A stretch of DNA of 64,000 bases, taken from NCBI RefSeq assembly GCF_032444005.1, contig NC_091290.1, positions 153,636,001 to 153,700,000 of the forward strand. Direction: 5' to 3'. Positions 1 through 60,237 of the stretch are shown piece after piece. This DNA is from Ranitomeya imitator. Lineage: Eukaryota. Position 1 is the stretch's first letter. Each line of letters begins with the position of its first letter. A program made the position numbers and the translations under genes. The notes below the pieces were generated by a model. It saw only the letters and a program-made list of their open reading frames with translations, did not search any database and was not told where the DNA came from.

Positions 1-3000
1 GGGTCCTCTCTCTCTCCTGTAGAGTGTAAGCTCTTATGGTCAGTGGGGTCCTCTCTCTCTCCTGTAGAGTGTAAGCTCTTATGGTCAGTGGGGTCCTCTC
101 TCTCTCCTGTAGAGTGTAAGCTCTTATGGTCAGTGGGGTCCTCTCTCTCTCCTGTAGAGTGTAAGCTCTTATGGTCAGCGGGGTCCTCTCTCTCCTGTAG
201 AGTGTAAGCTCTTATGGTCAGTGGGGTCCTCTCTCTCCTGTAGAGTGTAAGCTCTTATGGTCAGTGGGGTCCTCTCTCTCCTGTATAGTGTAAGATATTA
301 TGGTCAGTGGGGTCCTCTCTCTCCTGTAGAGTGTAAGCTCTTATGGTCAGTGGTGTCCTCTGTCTCCTGTAGAGTGTAAGCTCTTATGGTCAGTGGGGTC
401 CTCTCTCCTGTAGAGTGTAAGCTCTTATGGTCAGTGGGGTCCTCTCTCTCCTGTAGAGTGTAAGCTCTTATGGTCAGTGGGGTCCTCTCTCTCCTGTAGA
501 GTGTAAGGTCTTATGGTCAGTGGTGTCCTCTGTCTCCTGTAGAGTGTAAGCTCTTATGGTCAGTGGGGTCCTCTCTCCTGTAGAGTGTAAGCTCTTATGG
601 TCAGTGGGGTCCTCTCTCTCCTGTAGAGTGTAAGCTCTTATGGTCAGTGGGGTCCTCTCTCTCCTGTAGAGTGTAAGGTCTTATGGTCAGTGGTGTCCTC
701 TGTCTCCTGTAGAGTGTAAGCTCTTATGGTCAGTGGGGTCCTCTCTCTCCTGTAGAGTGTAAGCTCTTATGGTCAGTGGGGTCCTCTCTCTCCTGTAGAG
801 TGTAAGGTCTTATGGTCAGTGGTGTCCTCTGTCTCCTGTAGAGTGTAAGCTCTTATGGTCAGTGGGGTCCTCTCTCCTGTAGAGTGTAAGCTCTTATGAT
901 CAGTGGGGTCCTCTCTCTCCTGTAGAGTGTAAGCTCTTATGGTCAGTGGGGTCCTCTCTCCTGTAGAGTGTAAGCTCTTATGATCAGTGGGGTCCTCTCT
1001 CTCCTGTAGAGTGTAAGTTCTTATGGTCAGTGGGGTCTTCTCTCTCCTGTAGAGTGTAAGCTCTTATGGTCAGTGGGGTCCTCTCTCTCTTTTAGAGTGT
1101 AAGCTCTTATGGTCAGTGAGGTCCTCTCTATCCTGCAGAGTGTAAGCTCTTATGGTCAGTGGGGTCCTCTCTCCTGTAGAGTGTAAGCTCTTATGATCAG
1201 TGGGGTCCTCTCTCTCCTGTAGAGTGTAAGCTCTTATGGTCAGTGGGGTCCTCTCTCTCCTGTAGAGTGTAAGCTCTTATGGTCAGTGGTGTCCTCTGTC
1301 TCCTGTAGAGTGTAAGCTCTTATGGTCAGTGGGGTCCTCTCTCCTGTAGAGTGTAAGCTCTTATGGTCAGTGGGGTCCTCTCTCTCCTGTAGAGTGTAAG
1401 CTCTTATGGTCAGTGGGGTCCTCTCTCTCCTGTAGAGTGTAAGGTCTTATGGTCAGTGGTGTCCTCTGTCTCCTGTAGAGTGTAAGCTCTTATGGTCAGT
1501 GGGGTCCTCTCTCCTGTAGAGTGTAAGCTCTTATGATCAGTGGGGTCCTCTCTCTCCTGTAGAGTGTAAGCTCTTATGGTCAGTGGGGTCCTCTCTCCTG
1601 TAGAGTGTAAGCTCTTATGGTCAGTGGGGTCCTCTCTCCTGTAGAGTGTAAGCTCTTATGGTCAGTGGGGTCCTCTCTCCTGTAGAGTGTAAGCTCTTAT
1701 GGTCAGTGGTGTCCTCTCTCTCCTGTAGAGTGTAAGCTCTTATGGTCAGTGGGGTCCTCTCTCCTGTAGAATGTAAGCTCTTATGGTCAGTGGGGTCCTC
1801 TCTCTCCTGTAGAGTGTAAGCTCTTATGGTCAGTGGGGTCCTCTCTCCTGTAGAGTGTAAGCTCTTATGGTCAGTGGGGTCCTCTCTCCTGTAGAGTGTA
1901 AGCTCTTATGGTCAGTGGGGTCCTCTCTCCTGTAGAGTGTAAGCTCTTATGGTCAGTGGTGTCCTCTCTCTCCTGTAGAGTGTAAGCTCTTATGGTCAGT
2001 GGGGTCCTCTCTCCTGTAGAATGTAAGCTCTTATGGTCAGTGGGGTCCTCTCTCCTGTAGAGTGTAAGCTCTTATGGTCAGTGGGGTCCTCTCTCCTGTA
2101 GAGTGTAAGCTCTTATGGTCAGTGGTGTCCTCTCTCTCCTGTAGAGTGTAAGTTCTTATGGTCAGTGGGGTCCTCTCTCTCCTGTAGAGTGTAAGCTCTT
2201 ATGGTCAGTGGGGTCCTCTCTCTCCTGTAGAGTGTAAGCTCTTATGGTCAGTGGGATCCTCTCTCTCCTGTAGAGTGTAAGCTCTTATGGTCAGCGGGGT
2301 CCTCTCTCTCCTGTAGAGTGTAAGCTCTTATGGTCAGTGGGATCCTCTCTCTCCTGTAGAATGTAAGCTCTTATGGTCAGTGGGGTCCTCTCTCTCCTGT
2401 AGAGTGTGAGCTCTTATGGTCAGTGGGGTCCTCTCTCTCTCTCCTGTAGAGTGTAAGCTCTTATGGTCAGTGAGGTCCTCTCTCTCCTGTAGAGTGTAAG
2501 CTCTTATGGTCAGTGAGGTCCTCTCTCTCCTGTAGAGTGTAAGCTCTTATGGTCAGTGGGGTCCTCTCTCTCTCTCCTGTAGAGTGTAAGCTCTTATGGT
2601 CAGTGGGGTCCTCTCTCTCCTGTAGAATGTAAGCTCTTATGGTCAGTGGGGTCCTCTCTCTCCTGTAGAGTGTAAGCTCTTATGGTCAGTGGGGTCCTCT
2701 CTCTCCTGTAGAGTGTAAGCTCTTATGGTCAGTGGGGTCCTCTCTCTCCTGTGGAGTGTAAGCTCTTATGGTCAGTGGGGTCCTCTCTCTCCTGTAGAGT
2801 GTAAGCTCTTATGATCAGTGGGATCCTCTCTCTCTCCTGTAGAGTGTAAGCTCTTATGATCAGTGGGATCTTCTCTCTCTCCTGTAGAGTGTAAGCTCTT
2901 ATGATCAGTGGGATCCTCTCTCTCTCCTGTGGAGTGTAAGCTCTTATGGTCAGTGAGGTCCTCTCTCCTGTAGAGTGTAAGCTCTTATGGTCAGCAGGGT

Positions 3001-6000
3001 CCTCTCTCTCTCCTGTAGAGTGTAAACTCTTATGATCAGCGGGGTCCTCTCCCTCCTGTAGAGTGTAAGCTCTTATGGTCAGTGGGGTCCTCTCTCTCTC
3101 CTGTAGAGTGTAAGCTCTTATGGTCAGTGGGGTCCTCTCTCTCTCCTGTAGAGTGTAAGCTCTTATGGTCAGTGAGGTCATCTCTCTCCTGTAGAGTGTA
3201 AGCTCTTATGGTCAGTGGAGTCCTCTCTCTCCTGTAGAGTGTAAGCTCTTATGGTCAGTGGGATCCTCTCTCTCCTGTAGAGTGTAAGCTCTTATGGTCA
3301 GTGGGATCCTCTCTCTCCTGTAGAGTGTAAGCTCTTATGGTCAGTGGGATCCGCTCTCTCCTGTAGAGTGTAAGCTCTTATGGTCAGTGGGGTCCTCTCT
3401 CTCCTGTAGAGTGTAAGCTCTTATGATCAGTGGGGTCCTCTCTCTCCTGTAGAGTGTAAGCTCTTATGGTCAGTGAGGTCATCTCTCTCTCCTGTAGAGT
3501 GTAAGCTCTTATGGTCAGTGGAGTCCTCTCTCTCCTGTAGAGTGTAAGCTCTTATGGTCAGTGGGATCCTCTCTCTCTCCTGTAGAGTGTAAGCTCTTAT
3601 GGTCAGTGGGGTCCTCTCTCTCCTGTAGAGTGTAAGCTCTTATGGTCAGTGGGGTCCTCTCTCTACTGTAGAGTGTAAGCTCTTATGATCAGTGGGGTCC
3701 TCTCTCTCCTGTAGAGTGTAAGCTCTTATGGTCAGTGAGGTCATCTCTCTCTCCTGTAGAGTGTAAGCTCTTATGGTCAGTGGGGTCCTCTCTCTCCTGT
3801 AGAGTGTAAGCTCTTATGGTCAGTGGGGTCCTCTCTCTCTCCTGTAGAGTGTAAGCTCTTATGGTCAGTGGAGTCCTCTCTCTCCTGTAGAGTGTAAGCT
3901 CTTATGGTCAGTGGGATCCTCTCTCTCCTGTAGAGTGTAAGCTCTTATGGTCAGTGAGGTCATCTCTCTCTCCTGTAGAGTGTAAGCTCTTATGGTCAGT
4001 GGAGTCCTCTCTCTCCTGTAGAGTGTAAGCTCTTATGGTCAGTGGGATCCTCTCTCTCCTGTAGAGTGTAAGCTCTTATGGTCAGTGGGGTCCTCTCTCT
4101 CCTGTAGAGTGTAAGCTCTTATGGTCAGTGGGTCCTCTCTCTCCTGTAGAGTGTAAGCTCTTATGGTCAGTGGGGTCCTCTCTCTCCTGTAGAGTGTAAG
4201 CTCTTATGGTCAGTGGGGTCCTCTCTCCTGTAGAGTGTAAGCTCTTATGGTCAGTGGGGTCCTCTCTCTCCTGTAGAGTGTAAGCTTTTATGGTCAGTGA
4301 GGTCCTCTCTCTCCTGTAGAGTGTAAGCTCTTATGGTCAGTGGGGTCCTCTCTCTCCTGTAGAGTGTAAGCTCTTATGGTCAGTGGGGTCCTCTCTCTCC
4401 TGTAGAGTGTGAGCTCTTATGGTCAGTGGGGTCCTCTCTCTCCTGTAGAGTGTAAGCTCTTATGGTCAGTGGGGTCCTCTCTCCTGTAGAGTGTAAGCTC
4501 TTATGGTCAGTGGAGTCCTCTCCTGTAGAGTGTAAGCTCTTATGGTCAGTGGGGTCCTCTCTCTCTCCTGTAGAGTGTAAGCTCTTATGGTCAGTGAGGT
4601 CCTCTCTCTCCTGTAGAGTGTAAGCTCTTATGGTCAGTGGGGTCCTCTCTCTCCTGTAGAATGTAAGCTCTTATGGTCAGTGGGGTCCTCTCTCTCTCTC
4701 CTATAGAGTGTAAGCTCTTATGGTCAATGGGGTCCTCTCTCTCCTGTAGAGTGTAAGCTCTTATGGTCAGTGGGGTCCTCTCTCTCCTGTAGAGTGTAAG
4801 CTCTTATGGTCAGTGGGGTCCTCTCTCTCCTGTAGAGTGTAAGCTCTTATGGTCAGTGAGGTCATCTCTCTTCTGTAGAGTGTAAGCTCTTATGGTCAGT
4901 GGGGTCCTCTCTCTCCTGTAGAATGTAAGCTCTTATGTTCAGTGGGGTCCTCTCTCTCCTGTAGAATGTAAGCTCTTATGGTCAGTGGGGTCCTCTCTCT
5001 CTCCTATAGAGTGTAAGCTCTTATGGTCAATGGGGTCCTCTCTCTCCTGTAGAGTGTAAGCTCTTATGGTCAGTGGGGTCCTCTCTCTCCTGTAGAGTGT
5101 AAGCTCTTATGGTCAGTGGGGTCCTCTCTCTCTCCTATAGAGTGTAAGCTCTTATGGTCAATGGGGTCCTCTCTCTCCTGTAGAGTGTAAGCTCTTATGG
5201 TCAGTGGGGTCCTCTCTCTCCTGTAGAGTGTAAGCTCTTATGGTCAGTGGGGTCCTCTCTCTCCTGTAGAGTGTAAGCTCTTATGGTCAGTGGGGTCCTC
5301 TCTCTCCTGTAGAATGTAAGCTCTTATGGTCAGTGGGGTCCTCTCTCTCTCCTATAGAGTGTAAGCTCTTATGGTCAATGGGGTCCTCTCTCTCCTGTAG
5401 AGTGTAAGCTCTTATGGTCAGTGGGGTCCTCTCTCTCCTGTAGAGTGTAAGCTCTTATGGTCAGTGGGGTCCTCTCTCTCCTGTAGAGTGTAAGCTCTTA
5501 TGGTCAGTGGGGTCCTCTCTCTCCTGTAGAGTGTAAGCTCTTATGGTCAGTGAGGTCATCTCTCTCCTGTAGAGTGTAAGCTCTTATGGTCAGTGGGGTC
5601 CTCTCTCTCCTGTAGAGTGTAAGCTCTTATGGTCAGTGGGGTCCTCTCTCCTGTAGAGTGTAAGCTCTTATGGTCAGTGGGGTCCTCTCTCTCCTGTAGA
5701 GTGTAAGCTTTTATGGTCAGTGAGGTCCTCTCTCTCCTGTAGAGTGTAAGCTCTTATGGTCAGTGGGGTCCTCTCTCTCCTGTAGAGTGTAAGCTCTTAT
5801 GGTCAGTGGGGTCCTCTCTCTCCTGTAGAGTGTGAGCTCTTATGGTCAGTGGGGTCCTCTCTCTCCTGTAGAGTGTAAGCTCTTATGGTCAGTGGGGTCC
5901 TCTCTCCTGTAGAGTGTAAGCTCTTATGGTCAGTGGAGTCCTCTCCTGTAGAGTGTAAGCTCTTATGGTCAGTGGGGTCCTCTCTCTCTCCTGTAGAGTG

Positions 6001-9000
6001 TAAGCTCTTATGGTCAGTGAGGTCCTCTCTCTCCTGTAGAGTGTAAGCTCTTATGGTCAGTGGGGTCCTCTCTCTCCTGTAGAATGTAAGCTCTTATGGT
6101 CAGTGGGGTCCTCTCTCTCTCTCCTATAGAGTGTAAGCTCTTATGGTCAATGGGGTCCTCTCTCTCCTGTAGAGTGTAAGCTCTTATGGTCAGTGGGGTC
6201 CTCTCTCTCCTGTAGAGTGTAAGCTCTTATGGTCAGTGGGGTCCTCTCTCTCCTGTAGAGTGTAAGCTCTTATGGTCAGTGAGGTCATCTCTCTTCTGTA
6301 GAGTGTAAGCTCTTATGGTCAGTGGGGTCCTCTCTCTCCTGTAGAATGTAAGCTCTTATGGTCAGTGGGGTCCTCTCTCTCTCCTATAGAGTGTAAGCTC
6401 TTATGGTCAATGGGGTCCTCTCTCTCCTGTAGAGTGTAAGCTCTTATGGTCAGTGGGGTCCTCTCTCTCCTGTAGAGTGTAAGCTCTTATGGTCAGTGGG
6501 GTCCTCTCTCTCTCCTATAGAGTGTAAGCTCTTATGGTCAATGGGGTCCTCTCTCTCCTGTAGAGTGTAAGCTCTTATGGTCAGTGGGGTCCTCTCTCTC
6601 CTGTAGAGTGTAAGCTCTTATGGTCAGTGGGGTCCTCTCTCTCCTGTAGAGTGTAAGCTCTTATGGTCAGTGGGGTCCTCTCTCTCCTGTAGAATGTAAG
6701 CTCTTATGGTCAGTGGGGTCCTCTCTCTCTCCTATAGAGTGTAAGCTCTTATGGTCAATGGGGTCCTCTCTCTCCTGTAGAGTGTAAGCTCTTATGGTCA
6801 GTGGGGTCCTCTCTCTCCTGTAGAGTGTAAGCTCTTATGGTCAGTGGGGTCCTCTCTCTCCTGTAGAGTGTAAGCTCTTATGGTCAGTGGGGTCCTCTCT
6901 CTCCTGTAGAGTGTAAGCTCTTATGGTCAGTGAGGTCATCTCTCTCCTGTAGAGTGTAAGCTCTTATGGTCAGTGGGGTCCTCTCTCTCCTGTAGAGTGT
7001 AAGCTCTTATGGTCAGTGGGGTCCTCTCTCCTGTAGAGTGTAAGCTCTTATGGTCAGTGGAGTCCTCTCCTGTAGAGTGTAAGCTCTTATGATCAGTGGG
7101 GTCCTCTTTCTCCTGTAGAGTGTAAGCTCTTATGGTCAGCGGGGTCCTCTCTCCTGTAGAGTGTAAGCTCTTATGGTCAGCAGGGTCCTCTCTCTCTCCT
7201 GTAGAGTGTAAACTCTTATGATCAGTGGGGTCCTCTCTCTCCTGTAGAGTGTAAGCTCTTATGGTCAGTGGGATCCTCTCTCTCCTGTAGAGTGTAAGCT
7301 CTTATGGTCAGTGGGATCCGCTCTCTCCTGTAGAGTGTAAGCTCTTATGGTCAGTGGGGTCCTCTCTCTCCTGTAGAGTGTAAGCTCTTATGGTCAGTGG
7401 GGTCCTCTCTCTCCTGTAGAGTGTAAGCTCTTATGATCAGTGGGGTCCTCTCTCTCCTGTAGAGTGTAAGCTCTTATGGTCAGAGGGGTCCTCTCTCTCC
7501 TGTAGAGTGTAAGCTCTTATGGTCAGTGGGGTCCTCTCTCCTGTAGAGTGTAAGCTCTTATGGTCAGTGGAGTCCTCTCCTGTAGAGTGTAAGCTCTTAT
7601 GGTCAGTGGGGTCCTCTCTCTCCTGTAGAGTGTAAGCTTTTATGGTCAGTGAGGTCCTCTCTCTCCTGTAGAGTGTAAGCTCTTATGGTCAGAGGGGTCC
7701 TCTCTCTCCTGTAGAGTGTAAGCTCTTATGGTCAGTGGGGTCCTCTCTCTCCTGTAGAGTGTGAGCTCTTATGGTCAGTGGGGTCCTCTCTCTCCTGTAG
7801 AGTGTAAGCTCTTATGGTCAGTGGGGTCCTCTCTCCTGTAGAGTGTAAGCTCTTATGGTCAGTGGAGTCCTCTCCTGTAGAGTGTAAGCTCTTATGGTCA
7901 GTGGGGTCCTCTCTCTCTCCTGTAGAGTGTAAGCTCTTATGGTCAGTGGGTCCTCTCTCTCCTGTAGAGTGTAAGCTCTTATGGTCAGTGGGTCCTCTCT
8001 CTCCTGTAGAGTGTAAGCTCTTATGGTCAGTGGGTCCTCTCTCTCCTGTAGAGTGTAAGCTCTTATGGTCAGTGGGTCCTCTCTCTCCTGTAGAGTGTAA
8101 GCTCTTATGGTCAGTGGTGTCTTCTGTCTCCTGTAGAGTGTAAGCTCTTATAGTCAGTGGGTCCTCTCTCTCCTGTAGAGTGTAAGCTCTTATGGTCAGT
8201 GAGGTCCTCTCTCTCTCCTGTAGAGTGTAAGCTCTTATGGTCAGTGGAGTCCTCTGTCTCCTGTAGAGTGTAAGCTCTTATGATCAGTGGGGTCTTCTCT
8301 CCTGTAGAGTGTAAGCTCTTATGATCAGTGGGGTCCTCTCTCCTGTAGAGTGTAAGCTCTTATGGTCAGTGGGGTCCTCTCTCCTGTAGAGTGTAAGCTC
8401 TTATGATCAGTGGGGTCTTCTCTCCTGTAGAGTGTAAGCTCTTATGATCAGTGGGGTCCTCTCTCCTGTAGAGTGTAAGCTCTTATGGTCAGTGGGGTCC
8501 TCTCTCTACTGTAGAGTGTAAGCTCTTATGGTCAGTGGGTCCTCTCTCTCCTGTAGAGTGTAAGCTCTTATGATCAGTGGTGTCCTCTGTCTCCTGTAGA
8601 GTGTAAGCTCTTATGATCAGTGGGGTCCTCTGTCTCCTGTAGAGTGTAAGCTCTTATGGTCAGTGGGGTCCTCTCTCTCTCTACTGTAGAGTGTAAGCTC
8701 TTATGGTCAGTGGGGTCCTCTCTCTCTCTCCTGTAGAGTGTAAGCTCTTATGATCAGTGGGGTCCTCTCTCTCCTGTAGAGTGTAAGCTCTTATGGTCAG
8801 AGGGGTCCTCTCTCTCCTGTAGAGTGTAAGCTCTTATGGTCAGTGGGGTCCTCTCCTGTAGAGTGTAAGCTCTTATGGTCAGTGGGGTCCTCTCTCTCCT
8901 GTAGAATGTAAGCTCTTATGGTCAGTGGGGTCCTCTCTCTCTCCTATAGAGTGTAAGCTCTTATGGTCAGTGGGGTCCTCTCTCTCCTGTAGAGTGTAAG

Positions 9001-10433
9001 CTCTTATGGTCAGTGGGGTCCTCTCTCTCCTGTAGAGTGTAAGCTCTTATGGTCAGTGAGGTCATCTCTCTTCTGTAGAGTGTAAGCTCTTATGGTCAGT
9101 GGGGTCCTCTCTCTCCTGTAGAATGTAAGCTCTTATGTTCAGTGGGGTCCTCTCTCTCTCCTATAGAGTGTAAGCTCTTATGGTCAGTGGGGTCCTCTCT
9201 CTCCTGTAGAGTGTAAGCTCTTATGGTCAGTGGGGTCCTCTCTCTCCTGTAGAGTGTAAGAGCTTATGGTCAGTGGGGTCCTCTCTCTCCTGTAGAGTGT
9301 AAGCTCTTATGGTCAGTGGGGTCCTCTCTCTCCTGTAGAGTGTAAGCTCTTATGGTCAATGAGGTCCTCTCTCCTGTAGAGTGTAAGCTCTTATGGTCAG
9401 TGGGGTCTTCTCTCTCCTGTAGAGTGTAAGCTCTTATGGTCAGTAGGGTCCTCTCTCTCCTGTAGAGTGTAAGCTCTTATGGTCAGTGGGGTCCTCTCTC
9501 CTGTAGAGTGTAAGCTCTTATGGTCAGTGGGGTCCTCTCTCCTGTAGAGTGTAAGCTCTTATGGTCAGTGGGGTCCTCTCTCTCCTGTAGAGTGTAAGCT
9601 CTTATGGTCAGTGGGGTCCTCTCTCTCCTGTAGAGTGTAAGTTCTTATGGTCAGTGGGATCCTCTCTCTCCTGTAGAGTGTAAGCTCTTATGGTCAGTGG
9701 GGTCCTCTCTCTCCTGTAGAGTGTAAGCTCTTATGGTCAGTGGGGTCCTCTCTCTCCTGTAGAGTGTAAGCTCTTATGGTCAGTGAGGTCCTCTCTCTCC
9801 TGTAGAGTGTAAGCTCTTATGGTCAGTGAGGTCCTCTCTCTCCTGTAGAGTGTAAGCTCTTATGGTCAGTGGGGTCCTCTCTCTCCTGTAGAGTGTAAGC
9901 TCTTATGGTCAGTGAGGTCCTCTCTCTCCTGTAGAGTGTAAGCTCTTATGGTCAGTGGTGTCCTCTCTCCTGTAGAGTGTAAGCTCTTATGGTCAGTGGG
10001 GTCCTCTCTCTCCTGTAGAGTGTAAGCTCTTATGGTCAGTGGGGTCCTCTCTCCTGTAGAGTGTAAGCTCTTATGGTCAGTGGGGTCCTCTCTCTCCTGT
10101 AGAGTGTAAGCTCTTATGGTCAGTGGGGTCCTCTCTCTCCTGTAGAGTGTAAGCTCTTATGGTCAGTGTGGTCCTCTCCCTCCTGTAGAGTGTAAGTTCT
10201 TATGGTCAGTGGGGTCCTCTCTCTCCTGTAGAGTGTAAGCTCTTATGGTCAGTGGGGTCCTCTCTCTCCTGTAGAGTGTAAGCTCTTATGGTCAGTGGGG
10301 TCCTCTCTCTCTCCTGTAGAGTGTAAGCTCTTATGATCAGTGGGGTCCTCTCTCTCTCCTGTAGAGTGTAAGCTCTTATGGTCAGTGGGGTCCTCTCTCC
10401 TGTAGAGTGTAAGCTCTTATGGTCAGTGGGGTC
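1..10433. repeat. Minisatellite array, 41-47 bp unit (GTGGGGTC(CT)nCCTGTAGAGTGTAAGCTCTTATGGTCA), roughly 240 copies, in WTIP intron 1; runs off the left edge
   Basis: Directly visible tandem unit; length varies with the (CT)n tract. Confidence 0.99.
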
Positions 10434-11019
10434 GGTCTTGCACTGGGAAATGACAGTACCCAACTGTGACCCCCGAGCAGGCATGTGGGGTCTTCAGCAC
10501 ATCGATCCCATGCACCCCTCAAGATGCTCCATAATGATGGACATTTCTCACCTCATGCATGACTGCGGCCTGTGTTTGGATTTTGACAGGTCAGCGGGGT
10601 CAATGAGGCAGAACCCCAGATAATCACTAAAGAGACCCCAAAAATCTGCTGTTACAAGATGATGAGTGTTGGAGGGGTCCACAGAAGCCCCCAACAAAAG
10701 AACAAAAAGTCAGTCACATGCACATCACGTCCGGTCACTGCAGCCGGCGTCGCATCAGCTCTGCTCCATCTCTAACGGCGCCGCAAGTAGGACACAAGGG
10801 ACGGAGAGCGTCAGCTCCAGAGCGCAACACCGCGAGACGCTGCAACGAGGGAAACAAGGCCGACCAATCAGATCTGCGCAAGTGGCCACCGCCGGGCAAC
10901 GTCATGTGTCAGATCAGAGCGCAGTCGTCACCAATGACGAGCGAGAGACGACACGGCCGGAGATGAAGCCCGGTGCACAAAGGGTTACACAGGCCGGCGA
11001 CGGGACCCTCCGTCCTCTC

Positions 11020-12383
11020 CCTGCACCCCCCCGTCCCCTCAGTCCTCCGGACACCCCCCGTCCCCTGACAACCCCGTCCCCTGAAACCCCCATCCACTCA
11101 GTCCTCCGGACACCCCCTGTCCCCTGACACCCCCGTCCCCTGAAACCCCATCCCCTGAAACCCCCATCCCCTCAGTCCTCCGGTCCCCCAGACACCACCA
11201 TTTCCCCAGTCCTCTGGACACCCCGGTCCCCCCTGCCCTCCGGACACCCTGGTTCCACAGACACCCCCGTCCCCTCAGTCCTCTGGTCCCCCGGTTACCC
11301 CAGTCCTCCGGTCCCACAGACACCCCCGTCCCCCGGACATCCCTGTCCCCTCAGTCCTCCGTCCCCCCGTCCTTGGGTTTTACCGAAGTACTCTTTCATG
11401 TGTATCTCCAGGGTCAGGGCCTCCAGCCTCCTCCGGTTGCCCCAGTTCTCTGGTCCCCCCTGCCCTCCGTCCCCCGGTTACCCCAGTCCTCCGGTCCCCC
11501 CCGGTTACCCCAGTCCTCCGGCTCCCCCCGGTTACCCCAGTTCTCCGGTCCCCCTGCCCTCCGTCCCCCGGTTACCCCGGTGTCCCCCCCCCTTCCGTCC
11601 CCCGATCCCCTCAGTCCTCCGGTCCCCCCCGCCCCGGCTCTTACCGAAGTACTCCTTCTTCATGTGCATCTCCAGCTCCCGCTCCAGGGTCAGGGCCTCC
11701 AGCCTCCTCCGGTTACCCCCGTCCCCTGGTTACCCCAGTCCTCCGGTCCCCTCAGTCCTCCGGTCCCCCCCGGTTACCCCAGTCCTCCGGTCCCCCCCGG
11801 TTACCCCAGTCCTCCGGTCCCCCCCATCCTCCGGTCCCCGGGCTCTTACCGAAGTACTCCTTCATGTGCATCTCCAGGGTCAGAGCCTCCAGCCTCCTCC
11901 GGTTACCCCCGTCCCCTCAGTCCTCCGGTCCCCCCTGCCCTCCGTCCCCCCCATCCTTCGGTCCCCCTCAGTCCTCCGGTCCCCCCCAGTCCTCCCCCGG
12001 TTACCCCAGTCCTCCGGTCCCCCTGCCCTCCGTCCCCCGGTTACCCCGGTCCCCCCAGTCCTCCGTCCCCCGGTCCTCCGGTCCCCCCTGCCCTCCGTCC
12101 CCCGGTCCCCCCTGCCCTCCGTCCCCCCCATCCTCCGGTCCCCCTCAGTCCTCCGGTCCCCCCCCGCCCCGGCTCTTACCGAAGTACTCCTTCTTCATGT
12201 TTATCTCCAGGGTCAGGGCCTCCAGCCTCCCCCGGTTACCCCAGTCTTCCGGCCCCCCCCGGTTACCCCAGTCCTCCGGTCCCTCCAGCCTCCCCCGGTT
12301 ACCCCAGTCCTCCGGTCCCCCCCAGGTTACCCCAGTCCTCCGGTCCCCCCCAGTCCTCCGGTCCCCCCCGCCCCGGCTCTTAC
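11020..12383. repeat. Compound C-rich repeat (GGTTACCCCAGTCCTCCGGTCCCC-type units) with four extra copies of the WTIP exon-1/intron-1 junction
   Basis: Copies of TTACCGAAGTACTC...CCAGGGTCAGGGCCTCCAGCCTCC at about 11381, 11641, 11846 and 12176, embedded in short C-rich repeats. Confidence 0.95.
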
Positions 12384-13287
12384 CGAAGTACTCCTTCTTC
12401 ATGTGCATCTCCAGCTCCCGCTCCAGCTCCAGGGTCAGGGCCTCCAGCCTCCTCTCCGCCGGGCTCGGGCCGCTCTCCTTCCCGGGGGTCACCTGGTAGG
12501 GCAGCTTGAAGCGGTGCAGGGTGGCGGAGCCGCGGGCCGAGCTGTAGCCGTACGAGGCGGTGGCGGGCTCGGCCGTGAGCTGCTCGTGTCGGGGGGGAGA
12601 GTGCGCCAGCAGCTTGTAGCCGCCGAGCTCCGCGCCCTCCCCCGGCAGCGCCTCCTCCTGCAGCCCCGGCGCCAGCATGGAGGAGCGGGGCGAGGGCCCC
12701 ATGGAGCCGCGGGAGCTCCGGGAGCTGTGGCTGGAGATGCTGGAGCGCGGGCTGGCCAGGGTGTTGGCGCGGCCGTCCTGCAGGCTGCGGCCTCCTCCTC
12801 CTCCTCCCCCGCCGCCGTCCGCCGCCGCCTCCCCGGGGCAGTAGCTGGAGCGCGGGCTGCCGTGCCGCTGGTCGTAGCCCAGGCTGATGCCGCTGGTGCG
12901 GGCGCTGCTCGGCTTGGAGCCGCCGTCGTGCAGGCTGGCCCGCGGGCTCGAGTGCTTGCTGGTGTCGCTGGCGGTGCTGGCGTAGCTGGAGCGCGGGCTG
13001 GGCGCCTCGTACTGGGCCAGGCTGCAGCGGGGGCTGGACAGGCGGCCGAGCTCCGGGCAGGCGGTGCTGGAGCGGGGACTGCTGCCGCCGCTGCTCCCGG
13101 GGTACATGCCCGGCCGGCCCGGGTAGCAGGGCAGCGCCACCTCCGCCTCCTGGCGGCTCCGGTACGGCTCGGCCGGGCAGTGGTAGAGCTGGAGGCCCGC
13201 GCCGTTCAGCCTCCGGGGCCGGCCCTCCTCCAGGCACAGCTCGTCCATCAGCCGGCCCACGTCCTCCTCCTCCGGATACTGCTCCAT
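12384..13287 (-). CDS. WTIP: WTIP (Ajuba/LIMD1/WTIP LIM family) coding exon 1, pre-LIM region; downstream exons are outside the window
   Basis: Translation MEQYPEEED...SPRSS repeats...[17 protein letters not shown]...[29 protein letters not shown] ends at a G|GTAAGA donor (phase 1), matching the known WTIP exon-1 end ([12 protein letters not shown]...YFG). It lies downstream of UBA2 on the same strand, as in human. Confidence 0.9.
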
Positions 13288-13535
13288 GCTGGCGAGGGGG
13301 GAAGCTTCATCCCAGCCCGGGCTGCGAGGTGCGGGGCTCCGGGGGCGGCTGGGACCCCGCCGGGCGGAGGAGAGGGCAGCAGGGAGGAGAGGGCAGCAGG
13401 GAGGAGAGGGCAGCAGGGAGGAGAGGGCAGCAGGGAGGAGAGGGCAGGGGGCGGGCGGACTCTTTTCCTGCTGCCGCCGCTGCTCTTCTGTGTCTGCGGC
13501 TCCCGGACAGGAATGTGCGGAGGGAGACGGCGGTG

Positions 13536-13543: not shown

Positions 13544-13603
13544 CGGAGGAATGTGCTGCGGCGGGATCAGTGCGCCAGAGCGTCGGGACCTGAGAGCAGC
13601 CCC

Positions 13604-15680
13604 AGAGAGACCCCAATGTATCCCCCCACAGAGGAGACCCCAATGTACCCCCCACAGAGGAGACCCCAATGTATCCCCCCACAGAGGAGACCCCAATGTA
13701 CCCCCCACAGAGGAGACCCCAATGTATCCCCCCACAGAGGAGACCCCAATGTATCCCCCCACAGAGGAGACCCCAATGTACCCCCCACAGAGGAGACCCC
13801 AATGTACCCCCCACAGAGGAGACCCCAATGTACCCCCCACAGAGGAGACCCCAATGTATCCCCCCACAGAGGAGACCCCAATGTATCCCCCCACAGAGGA
13901 GACCCCAATGTACCCCCCACAGAGGAGACCCCAATGTACCCCCCACAGAGGAGACCCCAATGTACCCCCCCACAGAGGAGACCCCAATGTATCCCCCACA
14001 GAGGAGACCCCAATGTATCCCCCCACAGAGGAGACCCCAATGTACCCCCCACAGAGGAGACCCCAATGTACCCCCCCACAGAGGAGACCCCAATGTACCC
14101 CCCCACAGAGGAGACCCCAATGTATCCCCCCACAGAGGAGACCCCAATGTACCCCCCACAGAGGAGACCCCAATGTACCCCCCACAGAGGAGACCCCAAT
14201 GTATCCCCCCACAGAGGAGACCCCAATGTATCCCCCACAGAGGACACCCCAATGTATCTCCCACAGAGGAGACCCCAATGTATCCCCCCACAGAGGAGAC
14301 CCCAATGTACCCCCCACAGAGGAGACCCCAATGTACCCCCCACAGAGGAGACCCCAATGTATCCCCCCACAGAGGAGACCCCAATGTATCCCCCACAGAG
14401 GAGACCCCAATGTATCTCCCACAGAGGAGACCCCAATGTACCCCCCACAGAGGAGACCCCAATGTACCCCCCACAGAGGAGACCCCAATGTATCTCCCAC
14501 AGAGGAGACCCCAATGTATCCCCCCACAGAGGAGACCCCAATGTATCCCCCCACAGAGGAGACCCCAATGTATCCCCCGCAGAGGAGACCCCAATGTACC
14601 CCCCGCAGAGGAGACCCCAATGTACCCCCCGCAGAGGAGACCCCAATGTACCCCCCGCAGAGGAGACCCCAATGTACCCCCCGCAGAGGAGACACCAATG
14701 TATCCCCCCACAGAGGAGACCCCAATGTATCCCCCCACAGAGGAGACCCCAATGTACCCCCCCACAGAGGAGACCCCAATGTGTCCCCCCACAGAGGAGA
14801 CCCCAATGTACCCCCCACAGAGGAGACCCCAATGTACCCCCCCACAGAGGAGACCCCAATGTACCCCCCACAGAGGAGACCCCAATGTATCCCCCCACAG
14901 AGGAGACCCCAATGTATCCCCCCACAGAGGAGACCCCAATGTATCCCCCCACAGAGGAGACCCCAATGTACCCCCCACAGAGGAGACCCCAATGTATCCC
15001 CCCACAGAGGAGACCCCAATGTATCCCCCCACAGAGGAGACCCCAATGTATCCCCCCACAGAGGACACCCCAATGTATCCCCCACAGAGGAGACCCCAAT
15101 GTACCCCCCCACAGAGGAGACCCCAATGTACCCCCCCACAGAGGAGACCCCAATGTATCCCCCCACAGAGGAGACCCCAATGTACCCCCCACAGAGGAGA
15201 CCCCAATGTACCCTCCCACAGAGGAGACCCCAATGTACCCCCCCACAGAGGAGACCCCAATGTACCCCCCCACAGAGGAGACCCCAATGTACCCCCCACA
15301 GAGGAGACCCCAATGTATCCCCCCACAGAGGAGACCCCAATGTATCCCCCACAGAGGAGACCCCAATGTATCCCCCACAGAGACCCCAATGTACCCCCCC
15401 ACAGAGGAGACCCCAATGTATCCCCCCACAGAGGAGACACCAATATACCCCCCCCCCCAGAGGAGACCCCAACATGTCCCACCACACACCAGAGGAGACC
15501 CCAATATATCCCCCTCAGAGCAGAGAGGTGACCCCCAGCATGTCCCCCCTGAGCAGAGAGGAGACCCCAATATAACCCCCCACAGAGCAGAGACCCCCAA
15601 CGTGTCCCCCCACAGATCAGAGGAGACCCCAATATAACCCCCCCCACAGAGCAGAGGAGACCCCAACATGTCCCCCCCAC
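13604..15680. repeat. Minisatellite, 26-27 bp unit (CAGAGGAGACCCCAATGTA(C/T)CCCCC(C)A), C-rich on plus
   Basis: Visible tandem array of roughly 75 copies. Confidence 0.98.
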
Positions 15681-15723
15681 AAAGCAGAGACACGCCACCC
15701 CAGAGATCAGTGAGGAGACCACA

Positions 15724-18637
15724 AGGATCTGTACTGGGAGCAGAGGGGGCCGTGGGGATCTGTACTGGGAGCAGTGGGGGCCGTGGGGATCTGTACTGGG
15801 AGCAGTGGGGGCCGCGGGGATCTGTACTGGGAGCAGTGGGGGCCGCGGGGATCTGTACTGGGAGCAGTGGGGGCCGCGGGGATCTGTACTGGGAGCAGTG
15901 GGGGCCGCGGGGATCTGTACTAGGAGCAGTGGGGACCGCGGGGATCTGTACTGGGAGCAGTGGGGACCTCGGGGATCTGTACTGGGAGCAGGGGGGACCG
16001 CGGGGATCTGTACTGGGAGCAGAGGGGGCCACGGGGATCTGTACTGGGAGCAGTGGGGGCCGCGGGGATCTGTACTGGGAGCAGTGGGGGCCGCGGGGAT
16101 CTGTACTGGGAGCAGTGGGGACTGCGGGGATCTGTACTAGGAGCAGTGGGGACCTCGGGGATCTGTACTGGGAGCAGTGGGGACCTCGGGGATCTGTACT
16201 GGGAGCAGGGGGGACCGCGGGGATCTGTACTGGGAGCAGAGGGGGCCACGGGGATCTGTACTGGGAGCAGTGGGGGCCGCGGGGATCTGTACTGGGAGCA
16301 GTGGGGGCCGCGGGGATCTGTACTGGGAGCAGTGGGGGCCGCGGGGATCTGTACTGGGAGCAGTGGGGACTGCGGGGATCTGTACTAGGAGCAGTGGGGA
16401 CCGCGGGGATCTGTACTGGGAGCAGTGGGGACCTCGGGGATCTGTACTGGGAGCAGGGGGGACCGCGGGGATCTGTACTGGGAGCAGAGGGGGCCACGGG
16501 GATCTGTACTGGGAGCAGTGGGGACCTCGGGGATCTGTACTGGGAGCAGGGGGGACCGCGGGGATCTGTACTGGGAGCAGAGGGGGCCACGGGGATCTGT
16601 ACTGGGAGCAGTGGGGGCCGCGGGGATCTGTACTGGGAGCAGTGGGAGCCGCGGGGATCTGTACTGGGAGCAGTGGGGGCCGCGGGGATCTGTACTGGGA
16701 GCAGTGGGGACTGCGGGGATCTGTACTAGGAGCAGTGGGGACCGCGGGGATCTGTACTGGGAGCAGTGGGGACCTCGGGGATCTGTACTGGGAGCAGGGG
16801 GGACCGCGGGGATCTGTACTGGGAGCAGAGGGGGCCACGGGGATCTGTACTGGGAGCAGTGGGGGCCGCGGGGATCTGTACTGGGAGCAGTGGGGGCCGC
16901 GGGGATCTGTACTGGGAGCAGTGGGGGCCGCGGGGATCTGTACTGGGAGCAGTGGGGGCCGCGGGGATCTGTACTGGGAGCAGTGGGGGCCGCGGGGATC
17001 TGTACTGGGAGCAGTGGGGACCGCGGGGATCTGTACTGGGAGCAGTGGGGACCTCGGGGATCTGTACTGGGAGCAGGGGGGACCGCGGGGATCTGTACTG
17101 GGAGCAGAGGGGGCCACGGGGATCTGTACTGGGAGCAGTGGGGGCCGCGGGGATCTGTACTGGGAGCAGTGGGGGTCGCGGGGATCTGTACTGGGAGCAG
17201 AGGGGGCCGTGGGGATCTGTACTGGGAGCAGTGGGGGCCGCGGGGATCTGTACTGGGAGCAGTGGGGGCCGCGGGGATCTGTACTGGGAGCAGTGGGGAC
17301 TGCGGGGATCTGTACTAGGAGCAGTGGGGACCGCGGGGATCTGTACTGGGAGCAGTGGGGACCTCGGGGATCTGTACTGGGAGCAGGGGGGACCGCGGGG
17401 ATCTGTACTGGGAGCAGAGGGGGCCACGGGGATCTGTACTGGGAGCAGTGGGGGCCGCGGGGATCTGTACTGGGAGCAGTGGGGGTCGCAGGGATCTGTA
17501 CTGGGAGCAGTGGGGACCGCGGGGATCTGTACTAGGAGCAGTGGGGACCGCGGGGATCTGTTCTGGGAGCAGTGGGGACCGCGGGGATCTGTACTGGGAG
17601 CAGTGGGGACCTGTACTGGAAGCAGTGGGGACCGCTGGGATCTGTACTGGGAGCAGTGGGGACCGCGGGGATCTGTTCTGGGAGCAGTGGGGACCGCGGG
17701 GATCTGTACTGGGAGCAGTGGGGACCTGTACTGGAAGCAGTGGGGACCGCTGGGATCTGTACCGGGAGCAGTGGGGACCGCGGGGATCTGTACTGGGAGC
17801 AGTGGGGACTGCGGGGATCTGTACTGGGAGCAGTGGGGACCGCGGGGATCTGTACTGGGAGCAGTCGGGACCGCTGGGATCTGCATTGGGGACCGCGGGG
17901 ATCTGTACTGGGAGCAGTGGGGACCGCGGGGATCTGTACTGGGAGCAGTGGGGACGCGGGGATCTATACTGGAAGCAGTGGGGACCTGTACTGGAAGCAG
18001 TGGGGACCGCTGGGATCTGTACCGGGAGCAGTGGGGACCGCGGGGATCTGAACTGGGAGCAGTGGGGACTGCGGGGATCTGTACTGGGAGCAGTGGGGAC
18101 CGCGGGATCTGTACCGGGAGCAGTGGGGACCGCGGGGATCTGTACTGGGAGCAGTGGGGACCGCGGGATCTGTACCGGGAGCAGTGGGGACCGCGGGGAT
18201 CTGTACTGGGAGCAGTGGGGACCGCTGGGATCCGTACCGGGAGCAGTGGGGACCGCGGGATCTGTACCGGGAGCAGTGGGGACCGCGGGGATCTGTACTG
18301 GGAGCAGTGGGGACCGCGGGGATCTGTTCTGGGAGCAGTGGGGACCGTGGGGATCTGTACTGGGAGCAGTGGGGACCTGTACTGGGAGCAGTGGGGACCT
18401 GTACTGGAAGCAGTGGGGACCGCTGGGATCTGTATCGGGAGCAGTGGGGACCGCGGGGATCTGTACTGGGAGCAGTGGGGACTGCGGGGATCTGTACTGG
18501 GAGCAGTGGGGACCGCGGGATCTGTACCGGGAGCAGTGGGGACCGCGGGGATCTGTACTGGGAGCAGTGGGGACCGCTGGGATCTGTACCGGGAGCAGTG
18601 GGGACCGCGGGGATCTGTACTGGGAACAGTGGGGACC
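15724..18637. repeat. Minisatellite, 31 bp unit (GGGGATCTGTACTGGGAGCAGTGGGGGCCGC), G-rich on plus
   Basis: Visible tandem array of roughly 90 copies. Confidence 0.98.
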
Positions 18638-25176: not shown

Positions 25177-28100
25177 AGATGGAGGCCCAGTGCTATCACA
25201 TCGGGAGGGCGGTAATGTCACGATAGAGGCCCAGTGTTATCACATCGGGAGGGCGGAAATGTCGCGATGGGGGCCCAGTGCTATCACATCGGGAGGGCGG
25301 TAATGTCACAATGAGGCCCAGTGCTATCACATCGGGAGGGCGGAAATGTCACAATGAGGCCCAGTGCTATCACATCGGGAGGGCGGTAATGTCACAATGA
25401 GGCCCAGTGCTATCACATCGGGAGGGCGGTAATGTCACAATGAGGCCCAGTGCTATCACATCAGGAGGGCGGTAATGTCACGATAGAGGCCCAGTGCTAT
25501 CACATCGGGAGGGCGGTAATGTCACGATGGAGGCCCAGTGCTATCACATCGGGAGGGCGGTAATGTCACGATGGAGGCCCAGTGCTATCACATCGGGAGG
25601 GCGGTAATGTCACGATGGGGGCCCAGTGCTATCACATCGGGAGGGCGGTAATGTCACGATGGAGGCCCAGTGCTATCACATCGGGAGGGCGGTAATGTCA
25701 CGATGGGGGCCCAGTGCTATCACATCGGGAGGGCGGTAATGTCACGATGGGGGCCCAGTGCTATCACATCAGGAGGGCGGTAATGTCACAATGAGGCCCA
25801 GTGCTATCACATCGGGAGGGCGGTAATGTCACGATGGAGGCCCAGTGCTATCACATCGGGAGGGCGGTAATGTCACGATGGGGGCCCAGTGCTATCACAT
25901 CAGGAGGGCGGTAATGTCACAATGAGGCCCAGTGCTATCACATCGGGAGGGCGGTAATGTCACAATGAGGCCCAGTGCTATCACATCAGGAGGGCGGTAA
26001 TGTCACGATAGAGGCCCAGTGCTATCACATCGGGAGGGCGGTAATGTCGCGATGGGGGCCCAGTGCTATCACATCGGGAGGGCGGTAATGTCACAATGAG
26101 GCCCAGTGCTATCACATCGGGAGGGCGGTAATGTCACGATAGAGGCCCAGTGCTATCACATCGGGAGGGCGGTAATGTCACGATGGAGGCCCAGTGCTAT
26201 CACATCGGGAGGGCGGTAATGTCACGATGGAGGCCCAGTGCTATCACATCGGGAGGGCGGTAATGTCACGATGGAGGCCCAGTGCTATCACATCGGGAGG
26301 GCGGTAATGTCACGATGGAGGCCCAGTGCTATCACATCGGGAGGGCGGTAATGTCACGATAGAGGCCCAGTGCTATCACATCGGGAGGGTGGAAATGTCG
26401 CGATGGGGGCCCAGTGCTATCACATCGGGAGGGCGGTAATGTCACAATGAGGCCCAGAGCTATCACATCGGGAGGGCGGTAATGTCACGATGGAGACCCA
26501 GTGCTATCACATCGGGAGGGCGGTAATGTCACAATGAGGCCCAGTGCTATCACATCAGGAGGGCGGTAATGTCACGATAGAGGCCCAGTGCTATCACATC
26601 AGGAGGGCGGTAATGTCACGATAGAGGCCCAGTGCTATCACATCGGGAGGGCGGTAATGTCACGATGGAGGCCCAGTGCTATCACATCGGGAGGGCGGTA
26701 ATGTCACAATGAGGCCCAGTGCTATCACATCGGGAGGGCGGTAATGTCACGATAGAGGCCCAGTGCTATCACATCGGGAGGGCGGTAATGTCACGATGGA
26801 GGCCCAGTGCTATCACGTCGGGAGGGTGGTAATGTCACGATGGAGGCCCAGTGCTATCACATCGGGAGGGCGGTAATGTCACGATAGAGGCCCAGTGCTA
26901 TCACATCGGGAGGGCGGTAATGTCACGATGGAGGCCCAGTGCTATCACATCGGGAGGGCGGTAATGTCACGATGGAGGCCCAGTGCTATCACATCGGGAG
27001 GGCGGTAATGTCGCGATGGGGGCCCAGTGCTATCACATCGGGAGGGCGGTAATGTCACGATAGAGGCTCAGTGCTATCACATCGGGAGGGCGGTAATGTC
27101 ACAATGAGGCCCAGTGCTATCACATCAGGAGGGCGGTAATGTCGCGATGGGGGCCCAGTGCTATCACTTCGGGAGGGCGGTAATGTCACGATGGAGGCCC
27201 AGTGCTATCACTTCGGGAGGGCGGTAATGTCACGATGGAGGCCCAGTGCTATCACATCGGGAGGGTGGTAATGTCACGATGGAGGCCCAGTGCTATCACT
27301 TCGGGAGGGCGGTAATGTCACGATGGAGGCTCAGTGCTATCACATCGGGAGGGCGGTAATGTCACGATGGAGGCCCAGTGCTATCACATCGGGAGGGCGG
27401 TAATGTCACGATGGAGGCCCAGTGCCATCACATCGGGAGGGCGGTAATGTCGCGATGGGGGCCCAGTGCTATCACATCGGGAGGGCGGTAATGTCACGAT
27501 GGGGGCCCAGTGCTATCACATCGGGAGGGCGGTAATGTCACGATGGAGGCCCAGTGCTATCACATCGGGAGGGCGGTAATGTCGCGATGGGGGCCCAGTG
27601 CTATCACATCTGGAGGGCGGTAATGTCACGATGGGGGCCCAGTGCTATCACATCGGGAGGGCGGTAATGTCACGATGGGGGCCCAGTGCTATCACATCGG
27701 GAGGACGGTAATGTCACGATGGAGGCCCAGTGCTATCACATCGGGAGGGCGGTAATGTCACGATGGGGGCCCAGTGCTATCACATCGGGAGGGCGGTAAT
27801 GTCACGATGGAGGCCCAGTGCTATCACATCGGGAGGGCGGTAATGTCGCGATGGAGGCCCAGTGCTATCACATCGGGAGGGCGGTAATGTCGCGATGGGG
27901 GCCCAGTGCTATCACATCGGGAGGGCGGTAATGTCACGATGGGGGCCCAGTGCTATCACATCGGGAGGGCGGTAATGTCACGATGGAGGCCCAGTGCTAT
28001 CACATCGGGAGGGCGGTAATGTCACGATGGAGACCCAGTGCTATCACATCGGGAGGGCGGTAATGTCACGATGGAGGCCCAGTGCTATCACATCGGGAGG

Positions 28101-36197: not shown

Positions 36198-36230
36198 ATA
36201 CCTGAGACCAGTACTAAGTGTGATCATTAC

Positions 36231-38772: not shown

Positions 38773-38898
38773 CTAGAAAACACAAAAACAACAGAATTAG
38801 GGAGGGAACGCCGAGAGAAGCAACGCTCTGCAGAAGAAACGGGGGGGAAGGGGCAGATATATACATTGTTCTGAAGAGACCCCACCTGCCCATAATGC

Positions 38899-43002: not shown

Positions 43003-43016
43003 TCAATGTCCGTACT

Positions 43017-49363: not shown

Positions 49364-49444
49364 GTAAGTAATTGTCAGAAAACCTGTCCATCGTACAAAG
49401 AGGAACAAGATAATGATGAGTAACTCGTATATACGGAGCAGAAT

Positions 49445-56055: not shown

Positions 56056-56137
56056 GTAAGAGATCCAAAGGTACCCCATATATCACCCATAACGGGTCCC
56101 TGGAAGTCAGCGCAACTGAATGGATAAGCGGCATTCT

Positions 56138-60140: not shown

Positions 60141-60237
60141 GCTGCCTTCCATCTGCCATTTATAGCCTGCAAACCTCACACCTCCCGGGTCATACATACA
60201 TCATGAAGTTTGCAGACTCGATGATTTTTCTCTGCAG

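What the first reader, a model, noticed from the sequence alone, without database searches (positions are those of the whole stretch)
11381..12430. WTIP exon-1 splice donor amplified five-fold; the second copy gives an in-frame +68 aa isoform
Seen: the last 50-70 nt of exon 1 plus the donor (...LEALTLE..MKKEYFG|GTAA) occur five times, with exon ends at 12384 (original), 12180, 11850, 11645 and 11384, separated by a G-rich (sense) minisatellite. The gap 12384-12180 is 204 nt (68 codons) with no stop (the ORF runs to 12145) and keeps phase 1. Using donor 2 would therefore insert a Gly/Arg-rich segment and a second [17 protein letters not shown] motif just before LIM1. Donor 3 is also a multiple of 3 away but follows a stop; donors 4-5 shift frame. 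Inference: a minisatellite that captured a coding exon end creates competing 5' splice sites, giving a productive new isoform plus NMD isoforms whose ratio could depend on VNTR length.
Basis: partly seen in the sequence, partly recalled or inferred. Interest (0 to 1): 0.72.

Follow-up and report, generated by a model that had tools for sequence, protein, structure and literature searches.

The report
Splice-donor repeat in frog WTIP intron
The end of the first exon of the mimic poison frog's WTIP gene, with its splice signal, really is copied four more times inside a G-rich repeat at the start of intron 1, but this layout is already known from human genes such as F7, the annotated frog protein uses only the first signal, and I could get no RNA reads to see whether the copies are ever used.

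Summary
On the minus strand, WTIP exon 1 (ATG 13287, last base 12384, phase 1) is followed by four more copies of its last 48-63 nt plus the donor. These end at 12180, 11850, 11645 and 11384, inside a 1.35-kb G-rich minisatellite.

- **Donors:** donors 1-4 are identical (TCG|GTAAGA). Copy 5 is degraded (GTAAAA).
- **Frame:** the 204-nt gap to donor 2 is open and in frame (+68 aa). The first stop is at 12147-12145, so donors 3-5 would give premature stops.
- **Indirect evidence favours the first donor:**
  - The NCBI Ranitomeya imitator WTIP protein matches all 301 exon-1 codons and joins 12384 to LIM1.
  - Two other dendrobatids show the same junction.
  - No +68 aa isoform is on record.
  - In the F7 model, the most upstream of identical donors wins.
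- **Context:** 63% of the window is minisatellite arrays, so the copies look like a by-product of local unequal exchange.

The scan has already reported this kind of repeat at eight or more other genes of this genome (EMC1, FLVCR1, NECAP1, STT3A, GALNS, ZNRF1, MFN2, PIF1). Verdict: a new member of a known kind, of low to moderate interest.

The parts
12384..13287 (-). WTIP exon 1 coding part (301 codons plus the first base of a split codon; phase 1 at the donor)
   Evidence: Translation. Exact match of all 301 residues to the start of P0052, NCBI WTIP homolog isoform X1 of Ranitomeya imitator.
12375..12383 (-). Authentic donor 1, GTAAGAGCC, after exon end TCG
   Evidence: P0052 continues from here into LIM1 (EYFG then ICIKCG). 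It matches 6 of 9 consensus positions and has a U1 duplex of -8.2 kcal/mol.
12171..12233 (-). Copy 2 of the exon end plus donor (exon-like end at 12180). It is in frame, 204 nt after donor 1. It carries an 18-nt deletion and reads [11 protein letters not shown].
   Evidence: Its donor is identical to donor 1 over 21 nt on each side.
12145..12147 (-). First in-frame stop (TGA) of the read-through frame, 33 nt after donor 2
11841..11900 (-). Copy 3 of the exon end plus donor (end at 11850). It carries the 18-nt and 3-nt deletions, and its donor core is identical to donor 1.
11636..11710 (-). Copy 4 of the exon end plus donor (end at 11645). It is the copy closest to the original: 43 nt on the exon side and 33 nt on the intron side are identical, with only a 6-nt deletion upstream.
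   Evidence: (family D7, 96%).
11375..11434 (-). Copy 5 of the exon end plus a weakened donor (end at 11384, GTAAAACCC)
   Evidence: It matches 5 of 9 consensus positions and has a U1 duplex of -5.5 kcal/mol.
12282..12293 (-). Truncated 12-nt start-of-copy (GGAGGCTGGAGG) that runs straight into the minisatellite unit, without a donor
11028..12383 (-). G-rich (sense strand) minisatellite at the start of intron 1. It has 17/27-nt units such as GGACCGGAGGACTGGGGTAACC, carries the exon-end copies as a higher-order repeat, and contains 16 weaker GGG|GTAACC donor-like sites.
   Evidence: TRF, repeat families, unit search with 14 hits against 0 expected, composition and G-runs.

Best explanation
This is a splice-donor minisatellite. 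Intron 1 of the mimic poison frog's WTIP gene opens with a 1.35-kb G-rich tandem repeat. Rounds of unequal exchange or slippage within it have copied the last 48-63 nt of exon 1, together with the donor and the first 10-35 nt of the intron, four more times.

Shown:
- The copies exist and have decayed unevenly.
- Donors 1-4 are identical.
- The annotated mRNA product uses donor 1.
- The locus lies in a stretch of DNA that is 63% minisatellite arrays.

Inferred:
- The copies are a neutral by-product of a recombination-prone, GC-rich, tandem-repeat-rich region.
- The spliceosome picks the first, authentic donor for nearly all transcripts, as in human F7.
- Use of a later donor is at most minor: +68 aa from donor 2, and premature stops leading to NMD from donors 3-5.
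For: Structure:
- establish the copies, their frames and their sequence differences.
- Shared indels (18 nt in copies 2, 3 and 5; 3 nt in copies 3 and 5; 6 nt only in copy 4) and unit similarities (U1~U3, U2~U4) show several rounds of duplication followed by decay. Nothing is preserved for coding: the spacers carry stops in the exon frame from 12147 on.

Use of donor 1:
- P0052 (R. imitator WTIP X1) equals exon 1 over 301/301 residues and continues into LIM1.
- The junction is the same in R. variabilis and P. terribilis.
- It is also the same in 176 of 206 fetched WTIP-family proteins, and none of them has two EYFG motifs.
- No +68 form was found among proteins of 284-905 aa that match the exon-1 C-terminal part.

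Precedent:
- F7 IVS7 pseudo-sites are functional but silent because the most upstream site is chosen. LMNB2 and PDGF behave likewise (PMC1557585).

Context:
- Long tandem arrays cover 63% of the window. They include a 43-nt x 243-copy array further down intron 1 and a 27-nt x 75-copy array just upstream of exon 1.
- Frog subtelomeres are GC-rich, recombine often and expand tandem repeats by unequal crossing over (PMC10794172).
Against: - No RNA reads or transcript contigs of this locus were seen. The annotated model may rest partly on protein homology, so it cannot exclude minor isoforms.
- In 6-16/IFI6 and CBS the next two pseudo-sites are used as well.
- The decoys here lie 204-1000 nt away, not 37 nt as in F7, and the F7 paper itself reports that the effect depends on distance.
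- Classical duplicated-site experiments gave conflicting answers on which of two strong donors wins (discussed).
- All four donors sit in the same G-run-rich context, so context alone does not single out donor 1.
Confidence: 0.7

Rival explanations
1. One reading: the extra donors compete in vivo. Donor 2 gives a real 581-aa WTIP isoform with a Gly/Arg-rich 68-aa insert and a second [15 protein letters not shown] motif in front of LIM1. Donors 3-5 give NMD substrates, and repeat length tunes the ratio.
For: Donors 1-4 are identical from -4 to +8 or further. The 204-nt gap is open and in phase. Splicing from donor 2 would restore MKKEYFG directly before LIM1. The second and third sites are used constitutively in 6-16/IFI6 and CBS.
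Against: No such protein is on record among proteins of 284-905 aa that match exon 1. The annotated R. imitator, R. variabilis and P. terribilis proteins use the canonical junction. No fetched vertebrate WTIP has an insert between EYFG and LIM1. The copies show indels and substitutions without regard to coding, and the spacer after donor 2 stops the frame within 33 nt. F7, LMNB2 and PDGF use only the first site.
Confidence: 0.15
2. Assembly artefact: the five copies come from mis-assembly of a repeat, and the real allele has one donor.
For: The region is highly repetitive and GC-rich. I could not lay reads on it.
Against: The copies differ from one another by specific substitutions and by 3-, 6- and 18-nt indels, and the spacers are of unequal length (204, 330, 205, 261 nt). 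Artefactual expansion of a repeat gives near-identical units. The window has no N. The whole array is 1.35 kb, which single long reads should span.
Confidence: 0.04
3. The downstream donors win (the rule that the site nearest the 3' splice site is chosen when several strong sites are occupied). Most WTIP pre-mRNA in this frog would then be spliced from a decoy and degraded, and the array would act as a constitutive brake on WTIP output.
For: The donors are identical and strong. The older duplicated-site literature is divided on which site wins (discussed in PMC1557585).
Against: The pre-LIM and LIM parts of WTIP are highly conserved, and the annotated product uses donor 1. With an intron of more than 11 kb (no LIM exon in window 1-11380), 0.2-1 kb makes little difference to distance from the acceptor. 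The earlier notes from this scan report only first-donor use at NECAP1, STT3A, GALNS and PIF1 in this genome (not checked by me).
Confidence: 0.04

Closest known systems
Human F7 intron 7 37-bp VNTR (Borensztajn et al. 2006, PMC1557585)
   Same: The tandem repeat starts inside the exon, so the authentic donor is followed by identical pseudo-donors. Some pseudo-sites would keep the frame. Only the most upstream site is expected to be used.
   Different: In F7 every 37-bp monomer carries a donor, and only 4 nt of exon are copied. Here 48-63 nt of exon are copied, the donor-bearing copies are 204-330 nt apart as a higher-order repeat, and shorter 17/27-nt G-rich units fill the gaps. Here it is a first exon, so there is no upstream 3' splice site for exon definition. 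Use of the copies is untested.
Human 6-16 (IFI6/G1P3) intron 2 minisatellite and CBS intron 13 VNTR (cited in PMC1557585: Turri et al. 1995; Yang et al. 2000)
   Same: The donor is reiterated at an exon/intron border. In these genes the next two sites are used as well, giving small in-frame additions.
   Different: The units in those genes are short, so the additions are a few residues. Here the only in-frame option adds 68 residues, and the rest hit a stop. No transcript evidence is available for the frog.
Human LMNB2 (100-bp unit) and PDGF intron 4 (81-bp unit) border minisatellites (cited in PMC1557585)
   Same: The units are longer and carry the donor, and only the authentic donor is used.
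   Different: Those are regular arrays of one unit, not a nested repeat. Different genes and a different lineage.
Other splice-donor minisatellites noted by this scan in the same genome (EMC1, FLVCR1, NECAP1, STT3A, GALNS, ZNRF1, MFN2, PIF1)
   Same: Same genome and same layout (exon end plus donor amplified into the intron). ZNRF1 and FLVCR1 are also at the exon 1/intron 1 border.
   Different: WTIP has few copies (4 extra) at wide and unequal spacing, and one copy is in frame with a long (68 aa) open spacer. Those notes are AI notes that I did not re-test.

Membership tests
Splice-donor (exon/intron border) minisatellite, F7 / 6-16 / CBS / LMNB2 type | A tandem repeat whose first unit spans the exon-intron boundary | tested here: met
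   The copies begin at the RRLEALT codons of exon 1 and run through the donor into the first 10-35 nt of the intron. Caveat: the repeat is nested, with donor-bearing units 204-330 nt apart separated by 17/27-nt units.
Splice-donor (exon/intron border) minisatellite, F7 / 6-16 / CBS / LMNB2 type | The authentic donor sequence is reiterated in the intron | tested here: met
   TCG|GTAAGA occurs at 12384, 12180, 11850 and 11645, and TCG|GTAAAA at 11384. The 14-nt core occurs 5 times against 0 expected.
Splice-donor (exon/intron border) minisatellite, F7 / 6-16 / CBS / LMNB2 type | The first donor is used physiologically, and the pseudo-sites are silent or minor | tested here: inconclusive
   The annotated protein P0052 uses donor 1, and no +68 form is on record.
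Splice-donor (exon/intron border) minisatellite, F7 / 6-16 / CBS / LMNB2 type | Copy number varies between individuals (VNTR) | not testable with these tools
   Only one assembly is in hand.
WTIP (Ajuba/LIMD1/WTIP subfamily of LIM proteins) | Pre-LIM region orthologous to WTIP, ending in the conserved [17 protein letters not shown] motif at the exon 1 border | tested here: met
   301/301 identity to NCBI R. imitator WTIP X1. The best hits are WTIP of frogs, birds and reptiles.
WTIP (Ajuba/LIMD1/WTIP subfamily of LIM proteins) | Three C-terminal LIM domains | tested here: met
   They are present in P0052 (PF00412 precomputed; sequence). The exons encoding them are not in this window: there is no LIM-like ORF in 1-11380.

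The most novel reading that the evidence does not exclude
Donor 2 (12180) is used in a measurable share of transcripts. This would give a frog-specific 581-aa WTIP with a duplicated pre-LIM helix separated by a Gly/Arg-rich linker. Together with the eight or more other border repeats in this genome, the locus would form a natural series of identical donors at spacings of 200-1000 nt. That series could test how far the 5'-to-3' 'first site wins' rule of F7 reaches.
Probability: 0.12. Interest if true: 0.5.

Novelty: new member of a known kind. Interest (0 to 1): 0.25.

Why it matters
Reiterated identical donors are rare natural experiments on how the spliceosome chooses a 5' splice site. The human cases have short spacing (12-100 nt). 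The WTIP array offers identical donors 204, 534 and 739 nt downstream of a first-exon donor, in a uniform G-run context. One donor is in frame and the others are nonsense, so junction counts with and without NMD block would test the distance dependence of the F7 scanning rule. For the frog itself the finding is probably a harmless by-product of a repeat-rich region. It also warns annotators and RNA-seq aligners: reads with less than about 45 nt on the exon side cannot tell donor 1 from donor 4.

Tried and rejected
**Laying RNA reads**
  - The window query starts at 12846.
  - Searches used database proteins of other frogs (Mantella P0006, R. variabilis P0053), given by id. The search was confined to residues outside the homologous motif.
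  - looked up P0053 by id.
  - P0052, which is the window's own product, was sent to no search.

**Sequencing runs**
- Twelve runs hold 0.36-0.45 of the sampled words of 11000-13400. Exon 1 makes up about 0.42 of that stretch.
- This fits RNA that stops at the first donor. The run type is only guessed, however, and unassembled repeats would give the same figure, so I give it no weight.

**Other attempts**
- The look-up of encoding contigs on the R. variabilis orthologue, to compare intron 1 across species, was closed. No other tool reaches frog genomes.
- The search for exon 2 in the window found no LIM-like ORF on either strand, so intron 1 is longer than 11.4 kb and no junction could be modelled.
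- I tried to order the duplications from pairwise unit alignments. The scores suggest U1~U3 and U2~U4, but the shared indels pair copy 1 with copy 4 and copy 3 with copy 5, so the history is reticulate and I did not force a tree.
- The long ORFs on other frames and on the plus strand are what GC-rich, stop-poor repeats give. I rejected them as genes.
- I did not run the large HMMER search, because a low-complexity 68-aa query would not be informative.

Full report
**What is there.**
- Read on the minus strand, the window holds the first coding exon of WTIP.
- An ATG at 13287 opens a frame of 301 codons that ends with the first base of a split codon at 12384. The donor GTAAGAGCC follows.
- These 301 residues are identical to the start of P0052, the NCBI protein 'Wilms tumor protein 1-interacting protein homolog isoform X1 [Ranitomeya imitator]'. 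P0052 then continues ...MKKEYFG-ICIKCGKG into the first LIM domain.
- So the gene, the species and the authentic donor are settled.
- No LIM-like ORF lies in window 1-11380 on either strand. Exon 2 is therefore outside the window, and intron 1 is longer than 11.4 kb.

**The observation.**
- The 14-nt core GAGTACTTCGGTAA occurs five times, all on the minus strand. None is expected by chance.
- The alignment and one search show that each extra copy starts at the codons for RRLEALT and carries 48-63 nt of exon, the donor and 10-35 nt of intron.
- Copy 4 is nearly intact, with 43 nt on the exon side and 33 nt on the intron side identical to the original.
- Copies 2, 3 and 5 share an 18-nt deletion, and copies 3 and 5 share a further 3-nt deletion.
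- Copy 5 has lost the +4/+5 donor match (GTAAAA).
- A 12-nt stump of a further copy lies at 12282-12293.
- Between the copies lies a minisatellite of 17/27-nt units. The 22-nt unit occurs 14 times against none expected, and only here in the window.
- On the sense strand this minisatellite is 53% G and has 98 runs of three or more G. GC skew switches exactly at the exon border.

**The frame arithmetic.**
- Translation through donor 1 stays open for 68 codons to donor 2, and the phase is kept.
- The frame stops at 12147-12145, 33 nt after donor 2.
- Donor 3 is 534 nt from donor 1 (a multiple of three). Donors 4 and 5 are 739 and 1000 nt away (frame +1). All three lie behind that stop.

**Strength of the sites.**
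- Donors 1-4 read TCG|GTAAGA. They match 6 of 9 consensus positions and have a computed U1 duplex of -8.2 kcal/mol.
- Copy 5 scores 5 of 9 and -5.5 kcal/mol.
- The minisatellite adds 16 weaker GGG|GTAACC sites (5 of 9, -6.2 kcal/mol).
- Sequence alone therefore does not favour donor 1 over donors 2-4.

**Are the extra donors used?** I could not test this directly.
- I then worked beside those places and sent none of their letters to any search tool.

The evidence that remains is indirect:
- (a) The annotated R. imitator protein uses donor 1.
- (b) The R. variabilis and Phyllobates terribilis orthologues have the same junction.
- (c) I searched with the exon-1 C-terminal part of the R. variabilis protein among proteins of 284-905 aa. 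It returned only one R. imitator protein, the 513-aa form, in a cluster of one member. No 581-aa form appeared.
- (d) Of 206 WTIP-family proteins fetched, 176 run from EYFG straight into LIM1 and none has two EYFG motifs. The rest are exon-2-skipped forms or genomic read-through fragments.
- (e) The sequencing-run index shows runs holding 0.36-0.45 of the words of 11000-13400, and exon 1 is 0.42 of that stretch. The run type is only guessed and repeats may simply be unassembled, so I give this no weight.

**What is known about such layouts.**
- Borensztajn et al. (PMC1557585) describe minisatellites whose first unit spans an exon-intron border, and they list several human genes:
  - F7 intron 7: 37-bp units, and only the first donor is used.
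  - LMNB2 (100-bp units) and PDGF (81-bp units): only the authentic donor is used.
  - 6-16/IFI6 and CBS: the authentic donor plus the next two are used.
- Their 50-construct study shows that the F7 pseudo-sites are functional but lose to the most upstream site. They interpret this as a 5'-to-3' search.
- In-frame pseudo-sites are not preferred in F7. The effect weakens with distance.
- The WTIP array fits this class.
- It differs in three ways. The repeat is nested, with donor-bearing units 204-330 nt apart. It copies much more exon. It sits behind a first exon.

**Why it is there.**
- The window is 63% long tandem arrays:
  - a 43-nt unit repeated 243 times fills 8-10433, further down the same intron;
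  - 27-nt and 31-nt arrays fill 13603-18637, just upstream of exon 1;
  - ten more arrays follow.
- Exon 1 is a roughly 1.1-kb island between arrays. GC content is 50-76%.
- Frog subtelomeric regions are described as GC-rich, highly recombining and enriched in tandem repeats that expand by unequal crossing over. G-rich tetramers are over-represented in them (PMC10794172).
- The exon motif GGAGGCTGGAGG resembles the minisatellite core GGAGGACTGGGG. That resemblance could have let the repeat mispair with the exon end (inference).
- The shared indels and unequal spacers point to several rounds of duplication and exchange followed by decay, not to selection for a coding product.

**Verdict.**
- The feature is real and correctly described.
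- It is a further example of a known kind of repeat. The same scan has already reported this kind at eight or more other genes of this genome (EMC1, FLVCR1, NECAP1, STT3A, GALNS, ZNRF1, MFN2, PIF1). I used those notes only as leads and checked the literature behind them myself.
- The proposed isoform and NMD switch is possible but unsupported.
- I put about 0.7 on 'first donor used, copies silent or minor', about 0.15 on appreciable use of donor 2, and a few percent each on an assembly artefact or on the decoys dominating.

Noticed in passing
window 8-10433: A 43-nt minisatellite of 243 copies (93% matches) fills at least 10.4 kb of WTIP intron 1 and runs to the window edge. On the plus strand (antisense to WTIP) each unit has a pyrimidine tract ending in TAG, followed 5 nt later by GTAAGC. 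On the sense strand each unit has a weak ...CTCTACAG|G acceptor-like site.
   Followed up: partly
window 13603-18637, 25178-30190, 31971-32730, 34427-36198, 38050-38660, 38895-42634, 43015-44863, 45976-46547, 49443-55183, 56120-58148, 58958-60144, 62539-62970: There are many unrelated minisatellite arrays with units of 20-45 nt (one also shows a 223-nt higher-order period) and up to 138 copies. Together with the two intron arrays they cover 63% of the 64-kb window. The region looks like the GC-rich, tandem-repeat-rich subtelomeric DNA described for frogs.
   Followed up: partly
window 13366-13447: A perfect 17-nt repeat (4.8 copies, 100% matches; sense strand CTGCTGCCCTCTCCTCC) lies 80-160 nt upstream of the WTIP start codon, in the 5' UTR or core promoter.
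   Followed up: no
window about 12795-12830 (exon 1): A GGN/GGA run encodes nine consecutive glycines in R. imitator WTIP. R. variabilis has no such run at this place, and P. terribilis has five. This is a coding repeat that varies between close species.
   Followed up: no
P0209 (Phyllobates terribilis WTIP X1): A 14-residue tandem duplication (PGEGAEVGGYKLL-type) sits inside the exon-1 coding part. It shows that tandem duplication also reaches the coding sequence of this gene in dendrobatids.
   Followed up: no
P0053 (Ranitomeya variabilis): NCBI names this protein 'LIM domain-containing protein ajuba isoform X1'. It is 98% identical to R. imitator WTIP over the region compared (residues 173-306, the exon-1 C-terminal part) and clusters with Phyllobates WTIP, so this is probably a naming slip.
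   Followed up: partly
proteins P0007, P0008, P0009, P0013, P0191, P0196, P0202, P0203: Annotated WTIP isoforms of birds, reptiles, fish and a caecilian join EYFG directly to RRLRGKAF. That is, they skip exon 2 (the first half of LIM1) while using the same exon-1 donor.
   Followed up: no
They encode the conserved [14 protein letters not shown] motif of WTIP.
   Followed up: no
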